Below are positions 1 to 13,784 of a DNA stretch of 64,000 nt, piece after piece. Where the stretch lies: the NCBI GenBank assembly GCA_013416795.1, contig RQSC01000026.1, positions 205,335 to 269,334 of the forward strand. Reading direction: 5' to 3'. This DNA is from Prasinococcaceae sp. CCMP 1430 (Eukaryota > Plantae > Prasinodermophyta). The position numbers were made by a program, and so were the translations under genes. Below the pieces are notes generated by a model. It was not told the origin of the DNA. It saw nothing but the letters and a program-made list of their open reading frames with translations, and did not search any database. Within the stretch, counting starts at the first letter, position 1. Each line of letters starts with the position of its first letter.

Positions 1-103
1 CGCTCACGCACGTGCAGGTGCGCTCTTTGCGCGCCCGCGCGCGTGTGTGCCTGCCCTTGTCAATATGTGAGTGTGTGCATGTGTGTGTGTGTGAGCGTGT
101 GCA

Positions 104-145
<42 letters not shown>

Positions 146-247
146 TTCTCTCTGTCTTACGCACACGCATGTGTGCGCCCACGCCCCCGCACACACACAC
201 ACTCACACTCACACACAAACACACACACCAAACAAAAAAAAAAATAG

Positions 248-1172
248 GCCGTATACGATCACCAAGCAGCGCGAGTCCTGGACGGACGCCGAGCACACCA
301 AGTTCATCGAGGCGCTCAAGCTCTACAACCGCGAGTGGAAGATGATCGAGGCGTACGTGGGCACCAAGACGGTCATCCAGATCCGCTCGCACGCGCAGAA
401 GTACTTCCTCAAGGTCCAGAAGCTCGGCACGGGCGAGCACGTGCCGCCGCCGCGGCCCAAGCGCAAGAGCCTGCAGCCGTATCCGCACAAGGCCGAGACG
501 AAGACGCCCCGCACCAGTGGCGGGCGCTCGCGCAGCGGCAGTGCGTCGTCGCGCTCGCGCAGCAGCGGCAGGAAGAACGCGTCGGGGGCCAAGGGCACCG
601 CCAAGGCGGCGTCGGCGCGGGGTGCCAGCAAGAAGGCCGCGGCGGCGGGGCGAGCCGCCGCGGCCGCCGCGGCGGAGCTGCCCCCGATGCAGCCCACGAT
701 GCCGGACTTCTCGGTGGTGTACTCGCTGGTGAGCACGATGTTCGGCCCCGCGTGCAGCCTGCGCGACCCGCTGGAGGAGGGCGCCGCGGCTGGCGCGGAC
801 GGCGGGGCGGCCGGCGCCCAGGCGCATGGCGCGCCCGCCGGCGGCGCCGACGCCGAGGTGGACCCGTCGGACAGCCTCCTCTCGATGGCCCCCATCGACC
901 GCGAGACCGCGCTGCTGCTGCTCACCAACCTCACGAACAACCTGCAGTCGCGGGAGGTTTGGAGCAAGGAGATATGCAAGCTCAGCAGCTACGGCAAGCA
1001 GCTCCTCGAGGCGGACGACCCGCGCAGCATACCCACCAGGAGCCTCCCCGGGCACGAGACAATAACGTGTCGCGGCGGCCTCGTGGACGTCGACGCCGCG
1101 CGCGAGGTGCTGGCCAGCGGGGGCGGGCTCGCGTTGCAGCCCCACTGCAACGTGGCCGCGGCGGCCGTCTGA
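248..1172 (+). CDS. SHAQKYF-class MYB transcription factor, REVEILLE8/LCL clade (5' partial; probable intron 18-247)
   Basis: [12 protein letters not shown]...[19 protein letters not shown] domain plus LCL-type C-terminal motif ([10 protein letters not shown]...[20 protein letters not shown]). The upstream GT/CA-repeat stretch is bounded by GTGCGC...TAG. TGTAA follows at about 1389. Confidence 0.9.
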
Positions 1173-1535
1173 ATGGGCCGGCCGTCCTGGCCGCCTCGAG
1201 GCCGCGAGACGACGCGGGCGGGCCCCTCCCCCCCAACCCCCCCATCTGCAAGGCGCTCCGACGGCACGGCCACTGGCCGCACAGTTTTGCGACGCGACCG
1301 AGAGCGAGGCGGCGGCGCGCAGGCATGGCGCCGCTCGACTGCGGCGTCAGACCGCGCAAGCCTCGCTCGACAATTTTGACCCCGATCTTGTAAGCTCGAC
1401 ATAGCTGCTTTTTTTTGTTCACATCGCGACCTCCGGCGCATCGCGCGTGCGCCTCGCCTCCCGCGGAGCGCACCGGCGCCGCAGCTCGCCCGCGTTGCCT
1501 TGACGGCGCGCGTCGTGGCGGCGCATCCGCCTCCC

Positions 1536-1536
<1 letters not shown>

Positions 1537-1592
<56 letters not shown>
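1537..1592. repeat. (CA)n microsatellite
   Basis: Direct inspection. Confidence 0.95.
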
Positions 1593-1596
<4 letters not shown>

Positions 1597-1718
1597 GCGC
1601 GTGCCACTGCGTCCAGGGGAGCGTCTGCGCTGCGTTGGATACGGTTCAAAACGAATGATGCCGCGGGCCATGGGGGGGGGAGCCGGGAGGGTCTGAGGTC
1701 GCACGGCGCTCCGACACC

Positions 1719-3206
1719 TCAGAGGGCAGCCTCGCCCATCTCGACGCCTTTGCCGTTGGCGGCGACGAGGTTGTCCTCCATGTGCACCCACTTCCAGCCG
1801 CGGCGGCGGCTGCGCCAGCGCGAGAGCGCGACGGCGGCGCCCGCGAGCAGCGCGCCCACCGCCACCGACACGCCGACGCCGACGCCGATCGTCGTGTTGT
1901 CGATGGAGTTGCCGCGGTAGGTCTCTCCCTGCGCGCGCGCACACACACACACACACGCACGGGTGCCGGCGTGCGCGTGCGCGTGCGGTGTCAGACGGCG
2001 GCGTGGGCGCGCGGGTGGGGCGCCCGAGGCGATGTTCGCACGCGCGCGTGTGCGCGGGCGGGCGTCCGTGCGCGCGGGCGCTCGCGTGGACGCACGCGCG
2101 CGACGCGTCGCGAGGCACCCCCCCAGCACCCGCCGCACGCGCGCACTCACACATGCGCACACGCGCGCGTCCTCACAACGCACGCGCACACGACGCACAC
2201 GCACTCGCGCCGCGCGCGCGTCGCGCGTTTCCCTCACCTTCGCGAGCGTGTACGGCCCCGCCTCCCAGTGCGCCTCGCTGAGCCCGAATCCCGTCCAGCG
2301 CTTCAGCTGCTCGCCGAGCTCCCCGAGCGCCCCGCCGCCGTCGCGCCCCGCCGCGGCGTCGAGCCGCGCGAGCACGTCCGAGGCGACTGCCTCGCTCTCG
2401 GCGCCCACGTGAAAGAGCACGTGCATGCACAGCGAGCCCTCCGGGTGGGCCGCAGGCTCGTCGTCCTCCGAATCCGAGCCGTCGTCGTCCGAAAGGTCGT
2501 CTTCGTGGGCGTGGCCGTGGTCGTGCACGTCGCAGTCGAGCTCGTAGTCCATCCCCTCGAGCTTGACGTTCTTGGGCTCCACGCCCGCCACGCCCGCAAC
2601 GGCCGCCGAGAACCTCGCGTCCTCCTTGTACGACCACTGGTACGAGCTCGGGTCGGCCAGGTCGACATTGCTGCCCACAGGGTACACGATGTGGAGCTGG
2701 GCCTCCACGCGGTAGTCGTGGATGTTCATGTACTCGTGGACGCCCGTGCCCACCACCTTGCACCACATGACCGTGTTGGCGCCGCTGTCGCACTCGACGA
2801 GCGGCAGCTCCGCCTCGATCTCGCGCGCGTGCGAGCTCGACATGGCGCGCATGCGAAGCTTGAGGTCGACGCAGGCGGCGGCGTCGTTCTCCAGGCAGCA
2901 CCCGCCGCCGCGCATGGCCTGGGCGGAGATCAGGGCCACGTCGGAGTAGGTGGGCGCGTGCGGCTTGGCGTCCTCGCCCGCCCAGCGCGCGGCGTCGGGC
3001 GCGGCGGCCCTGAGCGCGGCGAGCGCGTAGTCGGCGCCGGCGTCGGCGGCGAGCGACAGCGAGCCGCGCGACACGCCCGCGGAGCCGGAGTCGGTCGTGA
3101 GCGCGTCGTCCGTCAGGCGGGCGCGCACCGTCGCCTCCACGTAGTTGGCCCACGCCGCGGACGCGACCGCCGACGCCGTCGGCTGGGTCGTGTCGACCAT
3201 GGCCAT
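1719..3206 (-). CDS. Uncharacterised single-pass membrane protein (intron 1929-2237; start uncertain)
   Basis: Long ORF with high GC3, a His/Asp-rich patch and a C-terminal TM helix (IGVGVGVSVAVGALLAGAAVALS) followed by RWRSRRR. Intron runs AAG|GTGAGG...CAG. Confidence 0.7.
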   Translation of the reverse strand: MAMVDTTQPTASAVASAAWANYVEATVRARLTDDALTTDSGSAGVSRGSLSLAADAGADYALAALRAAAPDAARWAGEDAKPHAPTYSDVALISAQAMRGGGCCLENDAAACVDLKLRMRAMSSSHAREIEAELPLVECDSGANTVMWCKVVGTGVHEYMNIHDYRVEAQLHIVYPVGSNVDLADPSSYQWSYKEDARFSAAVAGVAGVEPKNVKLEGMDYELDCDVHDHGHAHEDDLSDDDGSDSEDDEPAAHPEGSLCMHVLFHVGAESEAVASDVLARLDAAAGRDGGGALGELGEQLKRWTGFGLSEAHWEAGPYTLAKVRETRDARAARVRVRRVRVRCEDARVCACVSARVRRVLGGCLATRRARASTRAPARTDARPRTRARANIASGAPPARPRRRLTPHAHAHAGTRACVCVCARAQGETYRGNSIDNTTIGVGVGVSVAVGALLAGAAVALSRWRSRRRGWKWVHMEDNLVAANGKGVEMGEAAL

Positions 3207-4464
3207 CGCGCCCACGAGCGCCCGCCCGCCCGCGCAAGCAGGCACGCGCACACGCGCGTGGGTGGGTGGGTGGGCGGGTGGGTGGGTGGCTCGCACCTCC
3301 ACCCCGCGCGCGTGTGGCGCTCCTCCTCCCGCGTCTGCGCACCCGCGCCCGCACGGGCACGCCACACACACGCGCACACACGCGCGCGCACACGGCTGCC
3401 GACAATGCAGCAGCAGCGGCGCGATCGAGGCGCGCGCCGCGCGGGGAACTCGCGGAACGCCGCCGTCGAATGCGCCCTCTTGTCCGCGGTTCTCCCCAGT
3501 CTCTTCGAACGCGCTGTGCGGCCGCTCGCGCGCGCGCCGCCCGCACCGAAATGGACTTCCGTCGATCGCACCGCCGCCCCCCCCTCCCACGGGCAGGCAC
3601 CCGCACACGTGGGCGTGAAACCCTTCACGCGCCGAGAGATTCAAATACGACAAATGCCTCGCTTAAAACACGGTTCCGAAATGCTCTCTGTGCGATGGTG
3701 GTACATCTCATGCACGCGATGAAATGCGGGTCGCACCGAATTATACCGCGGTGATTTAATGTGGAAAATCCGGGGGAAAATGCAATGCGAGTATCGTATT
3801 TTTCTGGAATGAATTGGGTTTGGAATTGAATTCCGTGGCGCGTTCCCCCGCGCGCGCGAGCGCCCGGCGGCGGGCCGCCGGCCGGCCCCCGCAGGGAGGG
3901 AGAGTCGCCGACCGCCCATTTCGGCGGGGGCCTCGGCCGCGCGACGCACGAGGTGGAACGGCGAAAACTGCGGCGGAGGCGGCGTTTCGACGGCGGCCTT
4001 CCGCGAGTTCGGCCGGGGCGTGTGCCCGCCGCGCGCGGGTCCCACCCGGCCGGCCAGGGCCTGCCTGCGTGCGGCGCACATGCCCGCGCGCAGCATCCTG
4101 TCTGTAGTCTACTCACTACTACTCGGGCGCCGCGCGGGGGGAGAAGGGGGAGGAGTTGGGTGAGACGAGCGAGGCGCTGTGCGCGCAGCCGGCTGCCCGC
4201 GGAGAGGCGCCAGGGGCAGGCGACCCCGCCTGGCTGGCCCGCGCACGCAGCCGCGCGCGCCGCGAATTGATTTTGCCCTGGAAGGCGCCCGTGGGTGAAA
4301 GTGACTTATATTAGAATGTTGATATCAAGGGTTCGCTTGCGGTTCGCAGGCGGGAACGACGCGCCCAATGGGGTGCGTGTTATAGGGTCTACAAAAAGCG
4401 AAACGTGCGTGCACACGCACGCACGCGTGTGTGTGTGTGAGTGTGTGCGTGTGTGTGTGTGCAC

Positions 4465-4933
4465 TCACGTCTCCCACGCGTCGCCGGCGTGCTCGCGCAC
4501 CCACGCGCCAATCTGCTCCGCGCGCTCCGCGGGCAGCGTGTGGCCGTGCGGGTGCTCCACCACGTCGCCGCCCAGCGCGATCGCCAGCTGCATGCCCTGG
4601 CTGTACGGGTTGACGCCCTGCACCCCACGCGCGTCGCGCATACGTGTCAGCTCGGTGTACACACACACACGCACACACACACAGACGCACACACACACGC
4701 ACACACACACACGCACACACACACACACACTCTCGCGCCCGCACATCTTCTGGGCTGAGCACGTGCAGTATGTCCGGACCCTCGTACGCGGCCCCCCTCG
4801 GGCCGAGCCTCTGTCGCACGTTCTCGGCGACGTCCCCCGCGTGCGGCCGCGGCCACGCGGCGCCCGACAGCACGCACGCGCGCGCGTCGGGCAGCAAGCG
4901 ACGCGCCAGCAGGACGCCGAGCAACATGGCGCC
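4465..4933 (-). CDS. FSH1/OVCA2-like serine hydrolase, 3' exons only (4745-4933, 4465-4617)
   Basis: Spliced reading GAMLL...ILHVLSPED|GVNPY...VVEHPHGHTLP resembles the post-nucleophile helix, the Asp strand and the HxxGH motif. The 5' exons are lost at the N at 5025. Confidence 0.65.
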
Positions 4934-4959
4934 CTGCCCAGACGCGTGCGTGCGTGCGT

Positions 4960-4962
4960 GTG

Positions 4963-5024
<62 letters not shown>
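4960..5024. repeat. (GT)n microsatellite abutting a single-N join
   Basis: Direct inspection. Confidence 0.9.
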
Positions 5025-5028
5025 NTAC

Positions 5029-5415
5029 CTGAAGTCTTTGTCATGCGATCCGATCTGTGCGCATTGCATGCGGCGCGCGCGATCGGCCGCCGCGATCATC
5101 GGGCGCGCAGGCGAGGCACGACGGAGCGTGCCGTCGTGCGGTTGTCAGCGGCGGTCGTCAGCAGCCGGCGCGCACGAAACGAAACGCGCACAAGTGCGTA
5201 GGCGCCTGCAATGCGCGCGGCGCGGCGGCGCCCCATCGCGATCTGACTCGCGGCAGGCGGCGCGTGGCGACTCCCCAGCAGCCGCGCACGCAGCCACCAC
5301 CGGGGTGCCGCGCCCAACCCCACCACCACTCCATCTCCGCCCCTGTGCGGCGCGCGCGCGGCCGCCCCGCCCGCACCTTGTCCAGGATCTCGCGGATCCT
5401 CGCCCCCGACGGCAT
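5029..5415 (-). CDS. CAND1: CAND1 N-terminal exons (5377-5415 and 26-nt exon 5029-5054); remainder missing
   Basis: Spliced MPSGARIREILDK|IGSHDKDFR matches the CAND1 N-terminal ILEKMxxxDKD(F/Y)R motif. Both donors, the branch point and the acceptor are canonical. Confidence 0.7.
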
Positions 5416-6334
5416 GGCCGCAGCCGGCCGCCTCGGCGGCCTCCTCGGCCTCCTCTCCCGGCTCTGCCACCGAGAGCCGCTGCCAGCGGCCTTGCACGGC
5501 CTCGGGCGCCGACCCTCCCACCCACACCCCCCGCCTCCGGTCGCCTCGCTGCGCCGCGCCGCGCCGCGTGCGGGGCGTGTGGCGGCGGCGCTGTGCACGC
5601 GCGCGCGTGAGGCGTTTTGTCAGTTGTTTTTTCCTTGTGTTTATGTGTGCATTGCAGCAGGTGGCGTTTGATGGCGCTTCGCGCAATCATGGCTTATTAC
5701 ATGCAACGGCGGAGTTGGACGGGGGCCGCGTGGCGCTCGGCCGGATGATCGCGGCACGCACCGACTCTTTGCTGCACGGTGTATGCAACTTGCCACATGT
5801 TTCCTAGCAATCTTGGACTCACAGTTTGCGCGTCTCAAGGAGCATGCACACAAGGCCTGGTCTTGTAGCACGTGGTGGCCCCACGCGCGCAAAGGTTTCG
5901 CGGTGATCGCGGACAACACCCAGTAGACGCACTCGCGCAACCGGATTCGAGCTGGCGGGCGGAGCTCAACTGGTGCCATCCACCGGTCGGACTGCTGCCG
6001 AAGCTAAGCACACCGCTATCAAGGATGCGATCCAAAGCAACATACAAACGGCGGTGGCTCTCCAACGGTCGATGGCTCATCCTGCCTCCGCGAGCTCGGT
6101 GCCCATGGGGAGTACCGCAGTGCCGAGCGCCGCCCGCCGCGCGGCGCGGCGCGGAGTAGCGTGACGCGGCGCGGGGCGCTCAAGCGCTGCTGCGGAGGCC
6201 GCCGCAGGCGCGAAAACAGCTCGCGTGGCAGTCACCGCTGTCGCTAGAGCGTGCGCCGACGTGCACGCCCTTTGTCTGTCTCCCCGTGTGGACTTTGTCC
6301 AACCTGCGTGCAGGCGCACGCGCGGCGTGGCGCA

Positions 6335-8173
6335 ATGGCGCTGGCGACGGTGGCGATGACCAGTGCCGCCGGCGCGGGGAGCTCTCAGAGCAGCGGACCA
6401 TGCAAACACACACACCGAGCGCAAGCACGAGCGCGAGCACGAGCACGAGCACGAGCACGAGCGCGGACACGACTGTGCGCCGCGTGCGCGAGCGCCGGCA
6501 CCGTCGATGGCCAAGGGCGATTCGACGGGGCGGGTCGCGCGGTGGAGGGCGGGGCGGATGCACCGCGGTGGCCTCTGGGCCCGCACGCGTACGCCTTGCG
6601 CATGGTGGCGACCGTCGTCTTGCCGATGTACATGACCTCGCTGGTCGAGCCCGCGGTGGGGCTCGCGGAGACGGCCATTCTGGGCCACCTTCCTGACACT
6701 GGCTCGGCGCCGGCGCTGGCGGCGATGGCGCTCACGTCGCCGCTTTTCAACCTCGCGCACGAGTGGGCGTGGGATCTGTCGATCGCCGTGGCTTCCGCGA
6801 GCGCCGGCGCCAAGAGCGCGCGGCAGGCGCGCGCGCTCGTGGGGCGCACGATCCTCATCGCAGCCGTCGCCGGCACCGCGCTCGCCGGCGTGTTGTTGGT
6901 GGGCGCCGGCGCCGTGTACGCGGCATGCGCGCCGGGCAGCATCGGCCGCATGGCGGCGGCGTACGCGGCCGTGCGGGCGTTGACCATGCCCACGCTGCTG
7001 TGCTCGAACGTCATCGAGGGCTTCTGGTACGGCCAGAAGGACTCCGTGACTCCCGCGGTGGTGTACGTCCTCTCGTCGGCGGCGACCATTTGCGCGCTCT
7101 ACCTGGCGGCGCCGCGCTTCGGCATCCTGGGCGCGGCCGTCAGCCTGGTGGTGGGGAGCTTTGCGACTGCGGCGATGCACTACGTCGCGCTGCGCGTTCG
7201 TGCGCCGGTGGGCGCGAGCGGAGCGGGCGCCGCGCGGCGCTCGGATGCCGCCAGCGGCGGCGGCGATGGCAGCGGGTCCGACAGCGACAGCGGCTCGGGG
7301 GACGACGGAGACCTCGACACGCTCGCGCTCGTCCGGAAGGTGAGCGCGTCGCTGCGCAGCGGCTACGCGCTGGCTACGATCTCGATGTGCAAAATCGGCG
7401 TCTACGGCCTCATCTCGCTCAGCGTGGCGAACGCGGGCGTGGTGCACGCCACGGCGGCGTACAAGGTCTTTGCGGAGATATACTGGACGCTCAGCTTTAC
7501 GTGCGAGCCGTCGTTCATGGCGGCGTCGACGCTGCTGCCGAGCGCGCGCTCCGAGCAGCTGCGCACGCGGCAGAAGCTGGTGAAGCCCACCGCGCGCGCG
7601 CTGTACGCCTTCGCCACACTCGTCGGGTTGATCCTCGCCGGCGTGGGCGCGTCAATGGCCACGATGCCGGTGCTCACATCCAACCCACAGGTGCTTGCGC
7701 ACCTCGCGCCGGCGGCGGGCTTGGTTTCGCTGACGCTCTTTTTGTCGAGCTTCACCTACACGACGGAGGTACGTGCCCATCGCTCGCGCGAGGGCTGCGG
7801 CGCGCGCGCTGGCTTTCTCGCGGCGCTGCCTGAGCGGAGTTGCGGGCGGAGCTGCGCTTCAGCCTGCGATGCGGCCCGCTGACGAGCGCTGCTCATCCTC
7901 TCCCACACCTGCGACGGCGGCCGTGGCCGCGCTCGCGCTCGGCGTCGCCAGGGCCTGCTCATAGGGCTTGGGCACATCCCGTATCTGCTCAAGGCCCAGG
8001 TGTGCAACGTCTTCGTGATGTCGGCGTACTGCGCAGCGGTCTGCGCGTTCGCGCCGGGCGGCATGACGCTCCTCGCGGCTGGGGCGGGCTGCGCCGCCTT
8101 CCAGTTCCTGCGGCTGGCGCAGCACGCCGTATTCTTGCGCCTCTCGGCGCGCCCACGCGCCCTGCTGCGGTGA
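6335..8173 (+). CDS. MATE efflux transporter (DinF/EDS5-like), possible organelle transit peptide; intron 7769-7951
   Basis: Multiple TM helices; LVEPAVGLAETAILGH, YAAVRALTMP, EGFWYGQKDSVTP and FTCEPSFMAASTLLP motifs. The final exon GLLIGLG...LLR* is in frame after splicing. Confidence 0.85.
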
Positions 8174-8434
8174 GCGGGCTCGGGGCGCCAACGCACGTCG
8201 CAGTCGCGCTGCAAACGCGCCGTCGGGCGACCGCGCGCGGTGCGCGCGAGCGCGTGGGATGGCCCGTGTATCCTCTATCGAAAATTACTGCCCTCTCGCG
8301 CTCGCGCAAGGGGTCCCCGGTGCTGCGTCGGCGGCGCGTCGGCGGCGCGCGCGCTGCCGTGTGTGTGGGTACCTGCGTGCCTTCCGAGTGCGTGCCGCTG
8401 CACGCGCTCCCAAGCTGCCTGGCGCGCGAGGCGC

Positions 8435-9561
8435 TCACTTGCTGCACGCGTCAGTGGCCTTGAGGTCCTCGAACGCCACCAGGAGGCGGTCGATGGTCGC
8501 GGTCTCGGCCTTGCGCAGCCACGAGCGCGGGTCGTAGTACTTCTTGTTGGGCTTGTCGTCGCCCTCCGGGTTGCCGATCTGGCTCTGGAGGTAGGGGCCG
8601 TTCTCCTCGACGAACTCCTTCACGCCCGCCCACATGCTCCACTGGGTGTCGGTGTCGATGTTCATCTTGATCACGCCGTAGTCGATCGCCTCCTGGATCT
8701 CCTCGCGGCTCGAGCCCGAGCCGCCGTGGAAGACGAAGTAGACCGGCTTGTCCTCGTCGAGGTCGCGCTTCTCCTTGATGAACTTCTGCGCGTTGCCCAG
8801 GATCGAGGGGGTGAGCTCGACGTTGCCCGGCTTGTACACGCCGTGCACGTTGCCGAACGCGGCGGCGACGGTGAAGCCGTCCGAGATGGGCGAGAGGCAC
8901 TCGTACACGTAGTCGATCTCCTCGGGCTTCGAGTAGAGCTCGTCCTTGTCGACGTCGGTGTTGTCGACGCCGTCCTCCTCGCCGCCGGTGATGCCGATCT
9001 CGATCTCGAGCACGCAGTCGATCTTGGCCATGCGCTCGAGGTACTTCTTGCAGATCTCCATGTTCTCCTCGATGGGCTCCTCCGACAGGTCGAGCATGTG
9101 CGACGAGAAGAGCGGCTCGCCGTGCTCGGCGTAGTACTTCTCGTTGGCCTCGAGCAGGCCGTCGAACCACGGCAGCAGCTTCTTGGCGCAGTGGTCGGTG
9201 TGGAGGAAGACGGGCACGCCGTACTGCGCGGCGACCGCGCGGGTGTGGAGCGCGCCGGCGATGGTGCCCGCGATGGCGGCCTTCTCGTCGGTGTTGTCCA
9301 GGCCCTTGCCGGCCATGTTCAGGCCGCCGCCGTTGGAGAACTGCACCATGATGGGCGCGTTGGCCTTCATGGCGGCCTCCAGGCACGCGGTGATCACCGG
9401 GGTGCTGGTGCAGTTGACGGCGGGGATGGCGTAGCCGTTGTCGCGGGCGTGCTTGAGCACGGCCATCGAGTCCTTGCCCGACACCACGCCCGGCTTGACG
9501 ATGTCCGCCAGCTTCTGCGTCGTGGCGGCCTCGGCGCGCGCGGCCGCGCGGCGCGCGGCGC
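8435..9561 (-). CDS. fbaA: Class II (type A, FbaA-like) fructose-bisphosphate aldolase; 5' end in gap
   Basis: LHTDHCAKKLLPWFDG, SSHMLDLSEE, GITGGEEDG, FGNVHGVYKPG, FHGGSGS, KMNIDTD, PNKKYYDPR. Confidence 0.95.
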
Positions 9562-9970
9562 NNNNNNNNNNNNNNNNNNNNNNNNNNNNNNNNNNNNNNN
9601 NNNNNNNNNNNNNNNNNNNNNNNNNNNNNNNNNNNNNNNNNNNNNNNNNNNNNNNNNNNNNNNNNNNNNNNNNNNNNNNNNNNNNNNNNNNNNNNNNNNN
9701 NNNNNNNNNNNNNNNNNNNNNNNNNNNNNNNNNNNNNNNNNNNNNNNNNNNNNNNNNNNNNNNNNNNNNNNNNNNNNNNNNNNNNNNNNNNNNNNNNNNN
9801 NNNNNNNNNNNNNNNNNNNNNNNNNNNNNNNNNNNNNGGCCCGGGGCCAGGGCCAGGGGCAGGGGCAGCAGCGGGGCGGGCGCAAGGCGCGCGGCGCCCC
9901 GGCGCTGCCGCCAGCGCGGACGAGGGCAGCGACCACGAAGCACAGCAAGAAGCGCCGCCGCGCTGCAGGC

Positions 9971-10719
9971 ATGGGGAAGGACTACTACGCGCTGCTGGGC
10001 GTCTCGCGCGATGCGTCCGACTCGGAGCTCAAGAAGGCCTACCGCAAGCTCGCGATGAAGTGGCACCCAGACAAGGTGCGCCTCCCTGCTGCGCTCGGCT
10101 GCACCTGTCTCGCATTGCGGCGCCCGCTGCGAATGGATGCGCGCCAGCGTGTCGGAGTTGCGCAAGCTCTGGCAGCGCCAGTCGATCCGCTCGTGCGCGC
10201 GCGCGACGGTAGCGACGCCCTCGCTGGCATGGCGTGGCGCAGCTGGCCGCTGCTGCTGACCCGTGTCAATGGGCGCAACGACGCCCTGCTTTCGCATTCC
10301 CCGTGTAGAACCCAGACAATCGTGAAGCCGCCGAGAAGAAGTTCAAGGAGATCTCCATGGCCTACGACGTGCTGAGCGACCCCGAGAAAAAACAAGTGTA
10401 CGACGCCTACGGTGAGGAGGGGCTCAAGCAGGGCATGGGCGGTGGTGGCGGCCCTGGCGGCGGCGGGTTCAGCTCGCGTCAGGCCGACGACATCTTCCGC
10501 GAGATGTTTGGCGGCGGCGCTGGCGGCATGGGTGCTGACGACATCTTCAGTCAGTTCTTCGGCGGCGGCATGGGTGGGGGCATGGGAGGCGGGGGGCCTT
10601 TCGGTGGCATGGGCGGCGGCATGCCGGGCATGGGCGGCATGGGCGGCATGCCGCGCCAGCGCGCGATCCGCCGCGGCCGCGGCGGCGGGGAGACGGACGG
10701 CGCCGCGGCGAGGGCGTAG
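9971..10719 (+). CDS. DnaJ/Hsp40 class B-like protein (J domain + G/F/M region); intron 10076-10308
   Basis: MGKDYY...KWHPDK|NPDN...[22 protein letters not shown], then a Gly/Phe/Met-rich tract. Confidence 0.9.
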
Positions 10720-11475
10720 GTAGGTACGGTAGGTGGGTAGGCACCCTCCCTCCCTTGCGCACGAGCACGTACACGCTGCCTCCGCGTGCACCCACCCACA
10801 CGAGCACACACGCCTGCGCGCGGATGCACACTCACACACACACACGGCGCATATCGCATGAAACGATTGAAGAATGTGGATGAGTTTCGGGGCGCGAAGC
10901 CGTTCCCCGAGCGCGCGCGCGCGCGCCGCCCCGCGCGCGACGAGCGAGGGGGCGCGCGAGGCCATCCGACCACGCATGTGCAGTACAGCAGTAGTATGCA
11001 CCGCCCCAGCAGGGTGCGCGGGCGTGCACGTGGGAGGGCTGAGGCGACGCTTCGAGGACTTCTGCGAGCCCGTTTCGGCCGGCGGCAGGATGCTGCTCGT
11101 GTGGCGCGGGGGTGCTTGCCCCGGGGTTTGGGGGGCCGGCGCCGCCTGCACTCGTGCGGACGCGTGATGTGTGCATACGTGTGCACACGTGTGTGTGCAC
11201 GTGTGTGCACGTGTGTGCATACGTGTACGCGCATACTTGCTGGAAAGTGCACGGTGGATGCCCTCCTAACTGTTGGCGACGGCTGCGACGAGCGCGCGGG
11301 GAACCCGGCGCGGGCGCGCACACGCGCGCGCCCGGGAGCGCGGGGGATGGGGGTGGGGGGGGAGGGAAGGGGGCGCAACCGGGGGATGGGAGAGGAAGCC
11401 CGATCGGTGCCACTCGCACGCACGCACGCACGCACTCGACCACCGACGCACCCCGCTCCAGCCAGCCTAGCAGAC

Positions 11476-12179
11476 ATGGCGCGCTCGACCTCCGCCGCTG
11501 CGGCGGTTGCCGTTCTTGCTGCCGCGGCCGCCGCGCCTGGCGCCGATGCCGTGTGCAACATGTGCCACGTGCAGTACTACCACAAGGTGAGCGCAGGCGA
11601 TCGCGTCTGCACGAGTGCGCGCGATCTGGCGCGGAAGTCGCGCGCTGACGAGCGCCCTCCGCCCGCGCCCACCTCAATCCCCCACCCCACCCCGCACACC
11701 GACCACCGGCCCCTGTCCGCCCGCTCTCTCGGCCACGCACCCGTGCACTCATGGACACCTTCGCTCGTCCGTGCGCGCGCCCGCTCGTGCTCGCGCGCGC
11801 CGTGCCCTCTTGCTTGATCGTACGCGCGCGTTTGTCCCGCTTCTGCATGCAGGCTCTCGCGACGCCCGAGCCCGCGCTCTCCACCGCCGGGTACTGCCAG
11901 CAGTACGCTGGCAAGTCTTGCTGCACGGCCGCCACGGCGAACAAGTACGTGCTCGCGCACTGACGCGCGCGCAGAACCCTCGCGCGCGCGTGCGCGCTGC
12001 CACGTCGCCAGCGCCCACTCGTTCCCCACCCACGCATGCCATGCGCCGCGCATGCGCGCGTCCTTGTCCTGGCGTGCCCAGCAGCGCCCCAAACCCTCAA
12101 CGGTCCATCAGGGCTGTCACGCACGTCCCGGGTGTACATCCACGCGCGCACACGCACGTACGCACCGACGTACTCCTCC

Positions 12180-12218
<39 letters not shown>

Positions 12219-13784
12219 ACGGCACGGGCGCAACGGACTAAACGCACGCGCGTGTGCGGGGAAGCGGAGCGCGCGGCAGGCGTCGCCGAGCGCGTCGCCG
12301 AGCGCGTCGCCGAGCACCACCGCCAGCACCACCGCCGGCACCGCCACGGCCGGCACCAGCGCCGGCGCCAGCGCCGCCGAGTTAAGGTTCAGACGCAAAC
12401 TGTGGGCCAAACTTCGCGCCCATTTGGGGTTACATCTCGGCTTGCACGTAGGGTTCACACCTTTGCGAAGCGGCGCCGAGTTTAGGTTAGAGTGCAAACT
12501 GAAGGTCAAACTCCGGACGGCTTTGGGGTAGGTATCGGCTCCTTATTAGGGTTCCTGAATAGTTTCCTGGGGGCGGCGGCTGGCGGCGGCTGCTCGCGCT
12601 GACTTGGTCACGTGCAATCGAGTAGGGGTGCCTGAGCTCCGCTCAGTGCTGAGATTATACCCTCAACTACCGGACCAGGATAATGCCTGCGTCGGAAACT
12701 CGCAACTCACACACACGCACACACACGCACACAAACGCGGTGCAGCGTCCACAACGACGTGCTGTACAGCTCGGACTACCGCTGGGACAAGGTGCGCATG
12801 GGGATGAGGGAGGATGTGCCACGCGGCGCGAACGCTCGGTCGGCAGATCCCGGCGCGCTCGTAGCAGACGTGCACGCGCCGTTGCTGACATCCCGCCGCC
12901 GCGGAACCCGCCAAACCGGCTGTGGCCTTGTCGCGCGCGCGCGCGCGCCCGCCCGTCCTCGCGCGCGCCCTCGCGCACGTGTCGCGCGCGCGCGGCACTC
13001 GCGAGCACAGTGCGGCAAGATGAGCGACGCCTGCCAGCAGTACTTCATCGATGAGGCGTGCCTGTACGAGTGCGACGAGCACGCCGGCCGCTACCGCAAG
13101 CATGAGAACTGCTCGGACCCGGACGGCAACCACTGGCAGATCGAGAACATGCCCATCAAGGCCTCCTTCTGGGACGGCTGGTACGAGGCGTGCAAGGACG
13201 ACCTCTTCTGTGGCCGCGGCTACTTCGACATGCCCACGTGCACGCAGGACCAGTGCAGCAAGTTCTCCGACATCTACGAGGACGGCGAGGACCTCGCGAT
13301 CGCCATGTGGGGCGGCGCCTTCACCTACGAGACCGACGAGACCAACGCCTACACCATGAGCTTCAAGGTGGGCGAGGAGAACCCCAACGACTCCGTCGAC
13401 CACCCGGCGGCCTTCCCGAACACGTGCGAGGGTTCCAGCCACGACTCCGTCTCGTTCAACGACCTGCAGGACTGCTTCGACGCGGAGATCAAGAGCATCG
13501 AGACGCTCCTCGCCTTTCACGCCGAGCACTCGGAGGAGGACCACGACTCCTCCTCCAACGCCAAGAGCATCGAGACGCTCCTCGCCTTTCACGCCGAGCA
13601 CTCGGACGAGATCGAGACGCTCCTCGCCTTTCACGCCGAGCACTCGGACGAGGACCACGACGACTCCTCCTCCATCGCCATCGCCGGCGTGGCCCTCGCG
13701 GCGCTCGCGTGCGTGCTCGCCTTCATCGCCATCATCCGCGGCGGCAAGAAGGCCGGCGCTGCCAAGTCGCCCAACTTCAACTAA
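11476..13784 (+). CDS. Folate receptor/riboflavin-binding-protein family membrane protein (exons 11476-11586, 11853-11944, 12746-12791, 13011-13784)
   Basis: Signal peptide, then a Cys pattern matching the folate receptor family: CHVQYYHK..PEP..YCQQY..SCCT..YRWDKCGKMSDACQQYFIDEACLYECD..MPI..WYEACKDDLFC. C-terminal TM helix. All splice phases are compatible. TGTAA at about 13869. Confidence 0.88.
12181..12218. repeat. Poly-C homopolymer within intron
   Basis: Direct inspection. Confidence 0.9.
12280..12570. repeat. Degenerate 12-bp minisatellite grading into an imperfect ~99-bp tandem duplication
   Basis: CGCCGAGCGCGT-type units. 12371 GCGCCGCCGAGTTAAGGTT..GCAAACTG..CAAACT..TTTGGGGT..TCGGCT..TAGGGTTC is paralleled at 12470. 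Confidence 0.7.
12619..12702 (+). ncRNA. TPP (THI-box) riboswitch aptamer, intronic
   Basis: P1 CGAGT/ACTCG; P2 AGGG/CCCT with GGTGC; P3 CTGAGC/GCTCAG; conserved GCTGAGA and ATACCC; P4 CCG/CGG; P5 CAGG/CCTG with ATAATG loop, followed by GCG. Confidence 0.95.
13491..13673 (+). repeat. Three in-frame tandem copies encoding IETLLAFHAEHS(E/D)E
   Basis: Nucleotide-identical core ATCGAGACGCTCCTCGCCTTTCACGCCGAGCACTCGGA, three copies. Confidence 0.95.

What the first reader, a model, noticed from the sequence alone, without database searches (positions are those of the whole stretch)
12598..12745. Intronic TPP riboswitch between a branch point and the 3' splice site of a folate-receptor-family gene
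Seen in the sequence: 12619-12702 has every element of a TPP aptamer, on the sense strand. P1 is CGAGU/ACUCG, P3 is CUGAGC/GCUCAG, the pyrimidine-binding UGAGA is present, and P5 is CAGG-AUAAUG-CCUG followed by GCG. P4 is CCG/CGG, a compensatory change from the usual CCU/AGG, which argues for selection on structure. The aptamer is in intron 2 (11945-12745, 801 nt; other complete introns here are about 70-330 nt). It lies 16 nt after a GCTGAC branch motif (12598-12603) and 43 nt before the CAG acceptor, and it contains several AGs. Established: eukaryotic TPP riboswitches act through alternative splicing (Neurospora NMT1, Chlamydomonas THI4/THIC, plant THIC). From memory, TPP riboswitches on folate-receptor-like genes were reported in Micromonas, so the pairing may not be unprecedented. 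Inference: thiamine controls production of this protein by switching splicing inside the coding sequence.
Basis: partly seen in the sequence, partly recalled or inferred. Interest (0 to 1): 0.93.

Follow-up and report, generated by a model that had tools for sequence, protein, structure and literature searches.

The report
Vitamin B1 riboswitch with poison splice
A vitamin-B1-sensing RNA fold in an intron of a marine green alga's folate-receptor-like gene contains a splice site that ocean transcripts really use, cutting the protein short; this is a known kind of switch on a known kind of gene, here in a new position and with direct RNA support.

Summary
The TPP aptamer is real: RF00059 at 12614-12714, 53.6 bits, E 4e-9, 0.7 bit under the gathering score. 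It lies in intron 2 of a 340-aa ATS1/FOLR-type (PF03024) membrane-protein gene. New here: ocean RNA shows exon 2 spliced to an AG inside the aptamer (P2 UAG|GGG, exon starts 12626). Two fully spliced JGI transcripts and one bridging Logan contig show the join; two more runs fit it. This isoform stops at 12633-35 (70 aa). The same P2 acceptor is the published mechanism in Chlamydomonas and plants, so the best model is TPP-bound = poison splice = OFF. Ligand dependence is untested. The productive join is inferred only from one run's graph. The 801-nt intron is misleading: 12218-12595 is absent from six ocean copies (intron about 435 nt) and lies elsewhere in a culture DNA run. It replaces one arm of a candidate anti-aptamer hairpin. 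The gene-riboswitch pairing is published (McRose 2014; 3' UTR there). The intron-2 position recurs in four other homolog types, one with tandem aptamers. This scan already reported a second copy in this genome (s1-396451). Verdict: a new variant of a known system.

The parts
11476..11586 (+). Exon 1 CDS: Ala-rich signal-peptide-like N-terminus and first Cys residues of the FOLR fold
   Evidence: Translation; junction E1|E2 in RNA contigs
11587..11852 (+). Intron 1 (266 nt, GT..AG), CTGAC 206 nt before the acceptor
11853..11944 (+). Exon 2, ending in phase 2 (AA)
11945..12745 (+). Intron 2, long form (single donor GTACGT; productive acceptor CAG 12743-45)
   Evidence: Restores the reading frame and homology; productive join inferred from contig ends in run X15
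12218..12595 (.). About 378-nt segment after a poly-C run, absent from ocean copies; probable mis-filled gap or strain-specific insertion; replaces the 5' arm of the candidate anti-aptamer hairpin
   Evidence: (X2 records 20 and 21)
12598..12603 (+). Branch-point motif GCTGAC, 23 nt before the in-aptamer AG
   Evidence: Sequence; a CTGAC before the aptamer also in L005, L006, L011
12619..12702 (+). TPP riboswitch aptamer (P1-P5)
   Evidence: RF00059 53.6 bits, E 4.3e-9; helix table
12624..12625 (+). Alternative 3' splice site AG in P2 (UAG|GGG); extended exon starts at 12626
   Evidence: Join 11944 to 12626 in L072 and L073 and X18 record 15; X15 record 2 and X17 record 9 fit
12633..12635 (+). 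In-frame UGA of the poison isoform (70-aa product)
12706..12710 (+). CTCAC, weak candidate branch point for the distal acceptor, followed by a (CA)-rich AG-free tract
   Evidence: Sequence only; predicted single-stranded; untested
12746..12791 (+). Exon 3
12792..13010 (+). Intron 3 (219 nt); its only YTNAY motif lies 124 nt before the acceptor
13011..13784 (+). Exon 4: FOLR domain core, acidic repeat stalk, C-terminal hydrophobic helix, short tail, stop
   Evidence: PF03024 E 4.2e-19; PDB riboflavin-binding protein E 8.8e-11

Best explanation
A TPP-responsive OFF switch acting on 3' splice-site choice, like Chlamydomonas THIC. Intron 2 has one donor and two acceptors. Splicing to the distal CAG (12745) removes the aptamer and gives the 340-aa ATS1/FOLR surface protein, probably a B1 or B1-precursor capture protein. 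Splicing to the AG in P2 (12625) adds 120 nt with a UGA three codons in and gives a dead 70-aa peptide. SHOWN: aptamer, gene structure, use of the P2 AG in natural RNA, the stop codon. INFERRED: TPP binding favours the P2 AG. CANDIDATE ONLY: without ligand, a C-rich intron segment upstream of the branch point (present in wild copies) folds back over the branch point, P1 5' strand and P2 AG-GGG and hides the proximal site, leaving the distal site to be used; TPP plus P1/P2 displaces it.
For: RF00059 hit. Spliced transcripts L072 and L073 carry E1|E2, E2|12626 and E3|E4 and a 70-aa ORF. X18 record 15 bridges 11944 to 12626 with 49 and 76 nt either side; X15 and X17 contigs start at 12626 with about 30 extra letters; the DNA run X2 runs straight through. 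The P2 AGGG acceptor is the experimentally determined site in green algae and plants (PMC9544697). [quoted passage not shown] Micromonas ATS1 rises 80 to more than 100-fold without thiamine (PMC4260697). In relative L005 the productive acceptor has its own CTGAC (1404), and every acceptor near the aptamer gives a stop, so aptamer-proximal splicing can only switch the gene off there. AG in P2: 5 of 6 intronic aptamers against 1 of 8 parsed UTR ones (rows not independent). The upstream hairpin in wild copies is -22 to -25 kcal/mol, z -2.2 to -3.7; the cost of forming the aptamer is 8.7-12.5 kcal/mol, in a range ligand binding could pay (own knowledge).
Against: No thiamine-contrast data. The productive join was never seen directly, only inferred from contig ends at 11944 and 12746 in X15, and no full-length product of this gene is in the protein collection. 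The poison isoform is the assembled form in at least five ocean samples, which fits B1-replete cells but also a constitutive leak. The AG is base-paired in both predicted states, and branch-point opening cost barely differs (4.9 against 5.0-5.9 kcal/mol). The hairpin's capture of P1/P2 is no better than composition shuffles of the upstream 70 nt (21/100, 45/100, 17/100), and the z-score windows were chosen after seeing the fold. L011 has the intronic aptamer without the P2 AG. Diatom TPP aptamers of similar quality do not switch (PMC9544697).
Confidence: 0.62

Rival explanations
1. Ligand-insensitive or weakly sensitive element: the aptamer is kept, as in diatoms, and the P2 AG is simply the first good AG after a strong branch point, used at a roughly fixed, high rate.
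For: All assembled ocean transcripts are the poison form. Diatom THIC aptamers do not respond to thiamine (PMC9544697). Computed branch-point accessibility differs little between states.
Against: A constitutive poison splice of a B1-related gene would be costly. The ligand-contact residues and all helices are intact and covary across homologs. The non-switching diatom aptamers lack the P2 AG that this one has and uses.
Confidence: 0.18
2. ON switch by AG shielding: one branch point (12598) serves both acceptors. The TPP-bound fold closes P1, loops out all six AGs and lets the spliceosome reach the distal CAG, so the protein is made when TPP is high and the poison form when it is low.
For: This gene uses distant branch points: intron 3's only YTNAY is 124 nt from its acceptor, and intron 1 has a CTGAC 206 nt upstream with an AG-free stretch. 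The distal candidate CTCAC is weak. The poison form dominates in ocean samples, where B1 is often scarce (PMC4260697 abstract). All six AGs lie inside P1.
Against: Opposite to ATS1 induction on thiamine starvation and to the published P2-AG mechanisms. In L005, L006 and L011 the productive acceptor is more than 300 nt from the aptamer (own CTGAC/CTAAC in L005 and L006), so skipping the aptamer would not be productive there.
Confidence: 0.1
3. [quoted passage not shown]
For: Intron-2-retaining contigs in X17 and X18. The donor GUACGUG could pair with CACGUGC 12610-16 (read from sequence). P4/P5 masking of a donor is the plant and Neurospora mechanism.
Against: There is one donor only, and it is needed for the productive mRNA, so masking it at low TPP would silence the gene when it is needed. 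The complement is not conserved in L005. The retained pieces may be pre-mRNA or DNA (X18 also has intron 1). The GTAGGT at about 12528 lies in the segment that wild copies lack.
Confidence: 0.1

Closest known systems
Chlamydomonas/Volvox THIC intronic TPP riboswitch (Croft 2007, as described in PMC3597705, PMC10226581, PMC9544697; also mid-gene in Pyramimonas THIC, PMC4260697 Table S2)
   Same: Aptamer in a coding-region intron; AGGG acceptor in P2; alternative splicing that includes a premature stop
   Different: Host gene is a FOLR-fold surface protein, not a biosynthetic enzyme. Here it is a plain alternative 3' site (12626-12745 continuous with exon 3). I could not read the primary paper, so finer comparison is not possible.
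ATS1 of Micromonas and Bigelowiella (McRose 2014, PMC4260697) and diatom FOLR genes (Llavero-Pasquina 2022, PMC9544697)
   Same: PF03024 gene carrying a TPP aptamer; signal peptide; ATS1 is thiamine-repressed
   Different: Published ATS1/FOLR aptamers are all 3' (UTR). This one is in intron 2 and supplies a used splice site. No splicing mechanism has been reported for ATS1 in the papers I could search.
Land-plant THIC 3' UTR riboswitch
   Same: AG acceptor in P2 used in the switched isoform
   Different: There a donor is masked by P4/P5 and the output is 3' end processing, not a premature stop
Fungal type III intronic TPP riboswitches (PMC5882874) and Neurospora NMT1/NCU01977
   Same: Internal intron, stop codon retained at high TPP
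   Different: Those choose between two donors upstream of the aptamer; this one chooses between two acceptors

Membership tests
TPP riboswitch aptamer (RF00059) | Covariance-model match over the full model | tested here: met
   1-105/105, E 4.3e-9; 53.6 bits, 0.7 below gathering; most homolog aptamers also score 35-57
TPP riboswitch aptamer (RF00059) | CUGAGA pyrimidine sensor, GCG/GAC pyrophosphate sensor, helices P1-P5 | tested here: met
   all helices fully paired; P1, P4 and P5 covary across homologs
TPP riboswitch aptamer (RF00059) | Binds TPP | not testable with these tools
   needs in-line probing or ITC
Green-lineage splicing TPP riboswitch (Chlamydomonas THIC/THI4, plant THIC) | AG of P2 AGGG is used as an alternative 3' splice site | tested here: met
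   L072, L073; X18 record 15
Green-lineage splicing TPP riboswitch (Chlamydomonas THIC/THI4, plant THIC) | Alternative isoform is non-productive | tested here: met
   UGA 12633-35, 70-aa ORF
Green-lineage splicing TPP riboswitch (Chlamydomonas THIC/THI4, plant THIC) | Isoform ratio depends on thiamine/TPP | not testable with these tools
   no thiamine-contrast RNA available; contigs give no levels
Green-lineage splicing TPP riboswitch (Chlamydomonas THIC/THI4, plant THIC) | Mutually exclusive ligand-free fold (expression platform) | tested here: inconclusive
   upstream hairpin z -2.2 to -3.7 but not beyond composition shuffles
ATS1 / algal FOLR-like | PF03024 folate-receptor domain | tested here: met
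   E 4.2e-19
ATS1 / algal FOLR-like | Orthology to Micromonas RCC299 ATS1 (XP_002504942) | tested here: inconclusive
   that accession was not retrievable; 40% identity (E 2e-42) to a Pyramimonas MMETSP1081 protein, a genus where ATS1 was reported; homologs carry 3' UTR aptamers like ATS1
ATS1 / algal FOLR-like | Repressed by thiamine | not testable with these tools
   needs culture experiment

The most novel reading that the evidence does not exclude
The switch works by a mechanism not described for eukaryotic riboswitches in the papers I could search. Either an upstream intronic hairpin hides the branch point and the in-aptamer acceptor until TPP binds (3'-site masking by an anti-P1/P2 strand), or, in the stronger version, the TPP-bound fold shields its own AGs from a distant-branch-point scan and turns the gene ON.
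Probability: 0.25. Interest if true: 0.62.

Novelty: new variant of a known kind. Interest (0 to 1): 0.4.

Why it matters
It gives the uncharacterised ATS1/FOLR family a concrete splicing read-out. The exon 2 to 12626 versus exon 2 to 12746 ratio is a two-band RT-PCR test of whether a prasinophyte-grade riboswitch really switches, which matters because diatom aptamers turned out not to. If it does, the same ratio could report the vitamin B1 status of this alga directly from ocean metatranscriptomes. The family also shows the aptamer at three positions (5' UTR, intron 2, 3' UTR), even between tandem paralogs (L010), which bears on how eukaryotic riboswitches move and acquire splicing control.

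Tried and rejected
Rfam at gathering threshold on the whole window found nothing; this is a 0.7-bit near miss, not absence. The idea of a long intron as a sign of regulation was rejected. A cryptic donor or anti-aptamer within 12218-12595 was rejected as biology of the wild allele, since the segment is absent there. A 7-bp pairing of CUUGGUC (after the branch point) with GACCAGG (P5) was not favoured in any computed fold. A general anti-P2 element upstream of intronic aptamers was not significant per locus. The first shuffle script timed out. A window-wide test of branch motif to next AG distance was uninformative without annotated introns. The Cymbomonas homolog (L060) lacks these introns and has no aptamer within 5 kb. 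Croft 2007, Moulin 2013 and Mehrshahi 2020 were not held. Some UTR rows in the helix table were mis-parsed (L007, L029, L043, L052) and are not used for pairing counts.

Full report
Observation. The element described is there. Rfam RF00059 covers 12614-12714 on the + strand over the whole model at 53.6 bits, E 4.3e-9. The score is 0.7 bit under the gathering cut-off, which is why the default scan was blank. P1, P2, P3, CUGAGA, P4, P5 and the GCG motif are all intact, and the isolated 84-mer folds into the aptamer shape as its minimum-energy structure. Across homologous aptamers P1 (CGAGU/ACUCG against GCACU/AGUGC), P5 (CAGG/CCUG, CUGG/CCAG, CACG/CGUG, CGCG/CGCG, CGUG/CACG) and P4 (CCG/CGG against CUU/AGG) change on both sides and keep pairing.

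Host gene. Exons 11476-11586, 11853-11944, 12746-12791 and 13011-13784 give an open 340-aa frame. It has an Ala-rich N-terminal leader, a folate-receptor domain (PF03024, E 4e-19; nearest solved relative riboflavin-binding protein), an acidic repeat stalk, a C-terminal hydrophobic helix and a short tail. Introns 1 and 3 are confirmed in RNA. This is the gene type named ATS1 by McRose et al. 2014 (PMC4260697). There it carries a 3' UTR TPP riboswitch in Micromonas (and a 3' one in Bigelowiella) and is induced 80 to more than 100-fold without thiamine. Diatom FOLR genes also carry aptamers (PMC9544697). Earlier scan notes call the genome Prasinoderma coloniale. I did not verify this. The window's roughly 69% GC fits the published 69.8%, and that species is a B1 auxotroph (PMC7455551).

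What the RNA shows. Two JGI contigs, L072 and L073, are fully spliced transcripts of this gene. Exon 2 is joined not to 12746 but to 12626, just after the AG in the aptamer's P2 strand (UAG|GGG). They read through the rest of the aptamer into exon 3 and on to exon 4, and encode a 70-aa ORF ending ...NKGA-stop at 12633-35. In three independent ocean metatranscriptome runs the same join appears. X18 record 15 bridges it with 49 and 76 nt on the two sides and no mismatch in the aptamer part. X15 record 2 and X17 record 9 begin at 12626 with about 30 extra letters, the overlap expected from exon 2. The DNA run is contiguous there. A third JGI protein (P0239) starts inside exon 3 and runs into exon 4, as the poison isoform would give. 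The productive join is supported only indirectly. In X15 one contig ends exactly at 11944 and another starts exactly at 12746, which needs a path joining them. No full-length product is on record. Intron-2-retaining pieces occur in X17 and X18. Contigs give presence, not levels.

The intron length is an artefact or a private allele. Ocean copies L001, L002, L067 and L069-L071 lack window 12218-12595; intron 2 measures 434-438 nt where complete. In culture DNA run X2, 12231-12599 lies at the end of a 3.4-kb contig whose first 2983 nt do not match this locus, and the contig carrying the aptamer has other letters before 12596. The segment follows a poly-C run and ends at a GCGC overlap, so a mis-filled gap is the likelier cause (inference, about 65%). 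In the wild allele the missing stretch is a C-rich arm that can fold back over the branch point, the P1 5' strand and the P2 AG-GGG (-22 to -25 kcal/mol; z -3.7 and -2.2). Relative L005 has a different sequence that closes a similar hairpin (z -1.85), invariant in its stem arm across 15 copies, as is its aptamer. However, shuffles of the C-rich upstream sequence capture P1/P2 about as well, so this platform is a candidate only.

Relatives. ATS1/FOLR homologs from metagenomes carry TPP aptamers in three places. They are in the 3' UTR in L007, L012, L013, L016, L017, L019, L029, L048 and L065; in the 5' UTR of circularly permuted FOLR genes in L024, L036, L038, L043 and L052; and in the same intron 2 in L005-type (71% identical protein), L006, L008 and L011. 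L011 has the same phase and the same GTACGT donor. L009 is probably a further intronic case. The P2 AG is present in 5 of 6 intronic aptamers and 1 of 8 parsed UTR ones; these rows are not independent. In every intronic case use of the aptamer acceptor runs into a stop within the aptamer.

Mechanism. One donor, two acceptors; the proximal one lies in the aptamer and is poisonous (shown). The direction is inferred. The P2 AGGG acceptor is the experimentally established site in green algae and plants (PMC9544697). [quoted passage not shown] ATS1 is thiamine-repressed. In L005 and L006 the productive acceptor has its own branch motif far downstream, so anything the aptamer-side branch point does can only turn the gene off. 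I therefore put 0.62 on TPP-bound = poison splice = OFF. The main rivals are a constitutive leak (0.18; all assembled ocean transcripts are the poison form, and diatom aptamers do not switch), an ON switch by AG shielding (0.10; this gene does use branch points 120-200 nt from acceptors), and donor masking or retention (0.10).

Novelty. Each ingredient is published: the aptamer class, the coding-intron location (THIC), the P2 acceptor, and the ATS1/FOLR host. The combination was not in the papers I could search: ATS1 with an intronic, splice-site-bearing aptamer conserved across several algal homologs, with the poison isoform seen in ocean RNA. This scan had already reported a second copy in this genome (s1-396451) and had guessed such an acceptor there (s1-396536). 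It is a new variant of a known kind, interest 0.4. The joined spliced model was not submitted to any search or folding tool.

Noticed in passing
L006:23-125 and 132-252 (Logan SRR13370248): Two TPP aptamers in tandem in intron 2 of an ATS1 homolog, each with its own UAG|GGG acceptor and a branch-like motif before it. I found no eukaryotic tandem TPP riboswitch in the papers searched, but did not read them all.
   Followed up: partly
L010:1132-1286 and about 2930-3040: Two ATS1 paralogs in tandem; the first has its aptamer in the 3' UTR, the second in intron 2. The intronic one (same as L011) lacks the P2 AG and has an enlarged L5 loop containing a UGA in frame with the first AG in P3.
   Followed up: partly
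L024, L036, L038, L043, L052: FOLR-like genes whose domain halves are circularly permuted (the C-terminal half follows the signal peptide), with a TPP aptamer just upstream of the start codon; the L038/L052 aptamers have divergent P4/P5.
   Followed up: no
window:12218-12595: Segment absent from wild copies, with 12-nt GC-rich repeats and two 61-nt copies 99 nt apart (74% alike); lies at another locus in DNA run X2. Probable misassembly.
   Followed up: partly
window:11645-11852 and 12885-13010: Introns 1 and 3 have CTGAC motifs 206 and 124 nt before the acceptor with almost AG-free stretches between, suggesting distant branch points in this alga.
   Followed up: partly
window:13490-13670: The acidic stalk repeat (about KSIETLLAFHAEHS) varies in copy number among wild alleles: exon-4 products of 215-291 aa.
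   Followed up: no
run X2 record 22 (aligns to window:12642-12701): A 2.9-kb contig of the cultured strain carries a second aptamer with 5 differences and no gaps, apparently not identical to the L005 type; probably the copy in s1-396451.
   Followed up: no
window:8435-9430 (-) and about 9990-10719 (+): Upstream neighbours look like a class II fructose-bisphosphate aldolase and a DnaJ protein (from ORF translations; not searched); no thiamine link seen.
   Followed up: no
P0009 (1671 aa), P0015 (1105 aa), P0008 (512 aa): Proteins with 2-6 tandem ATS1-like domains.
   Followed up: no
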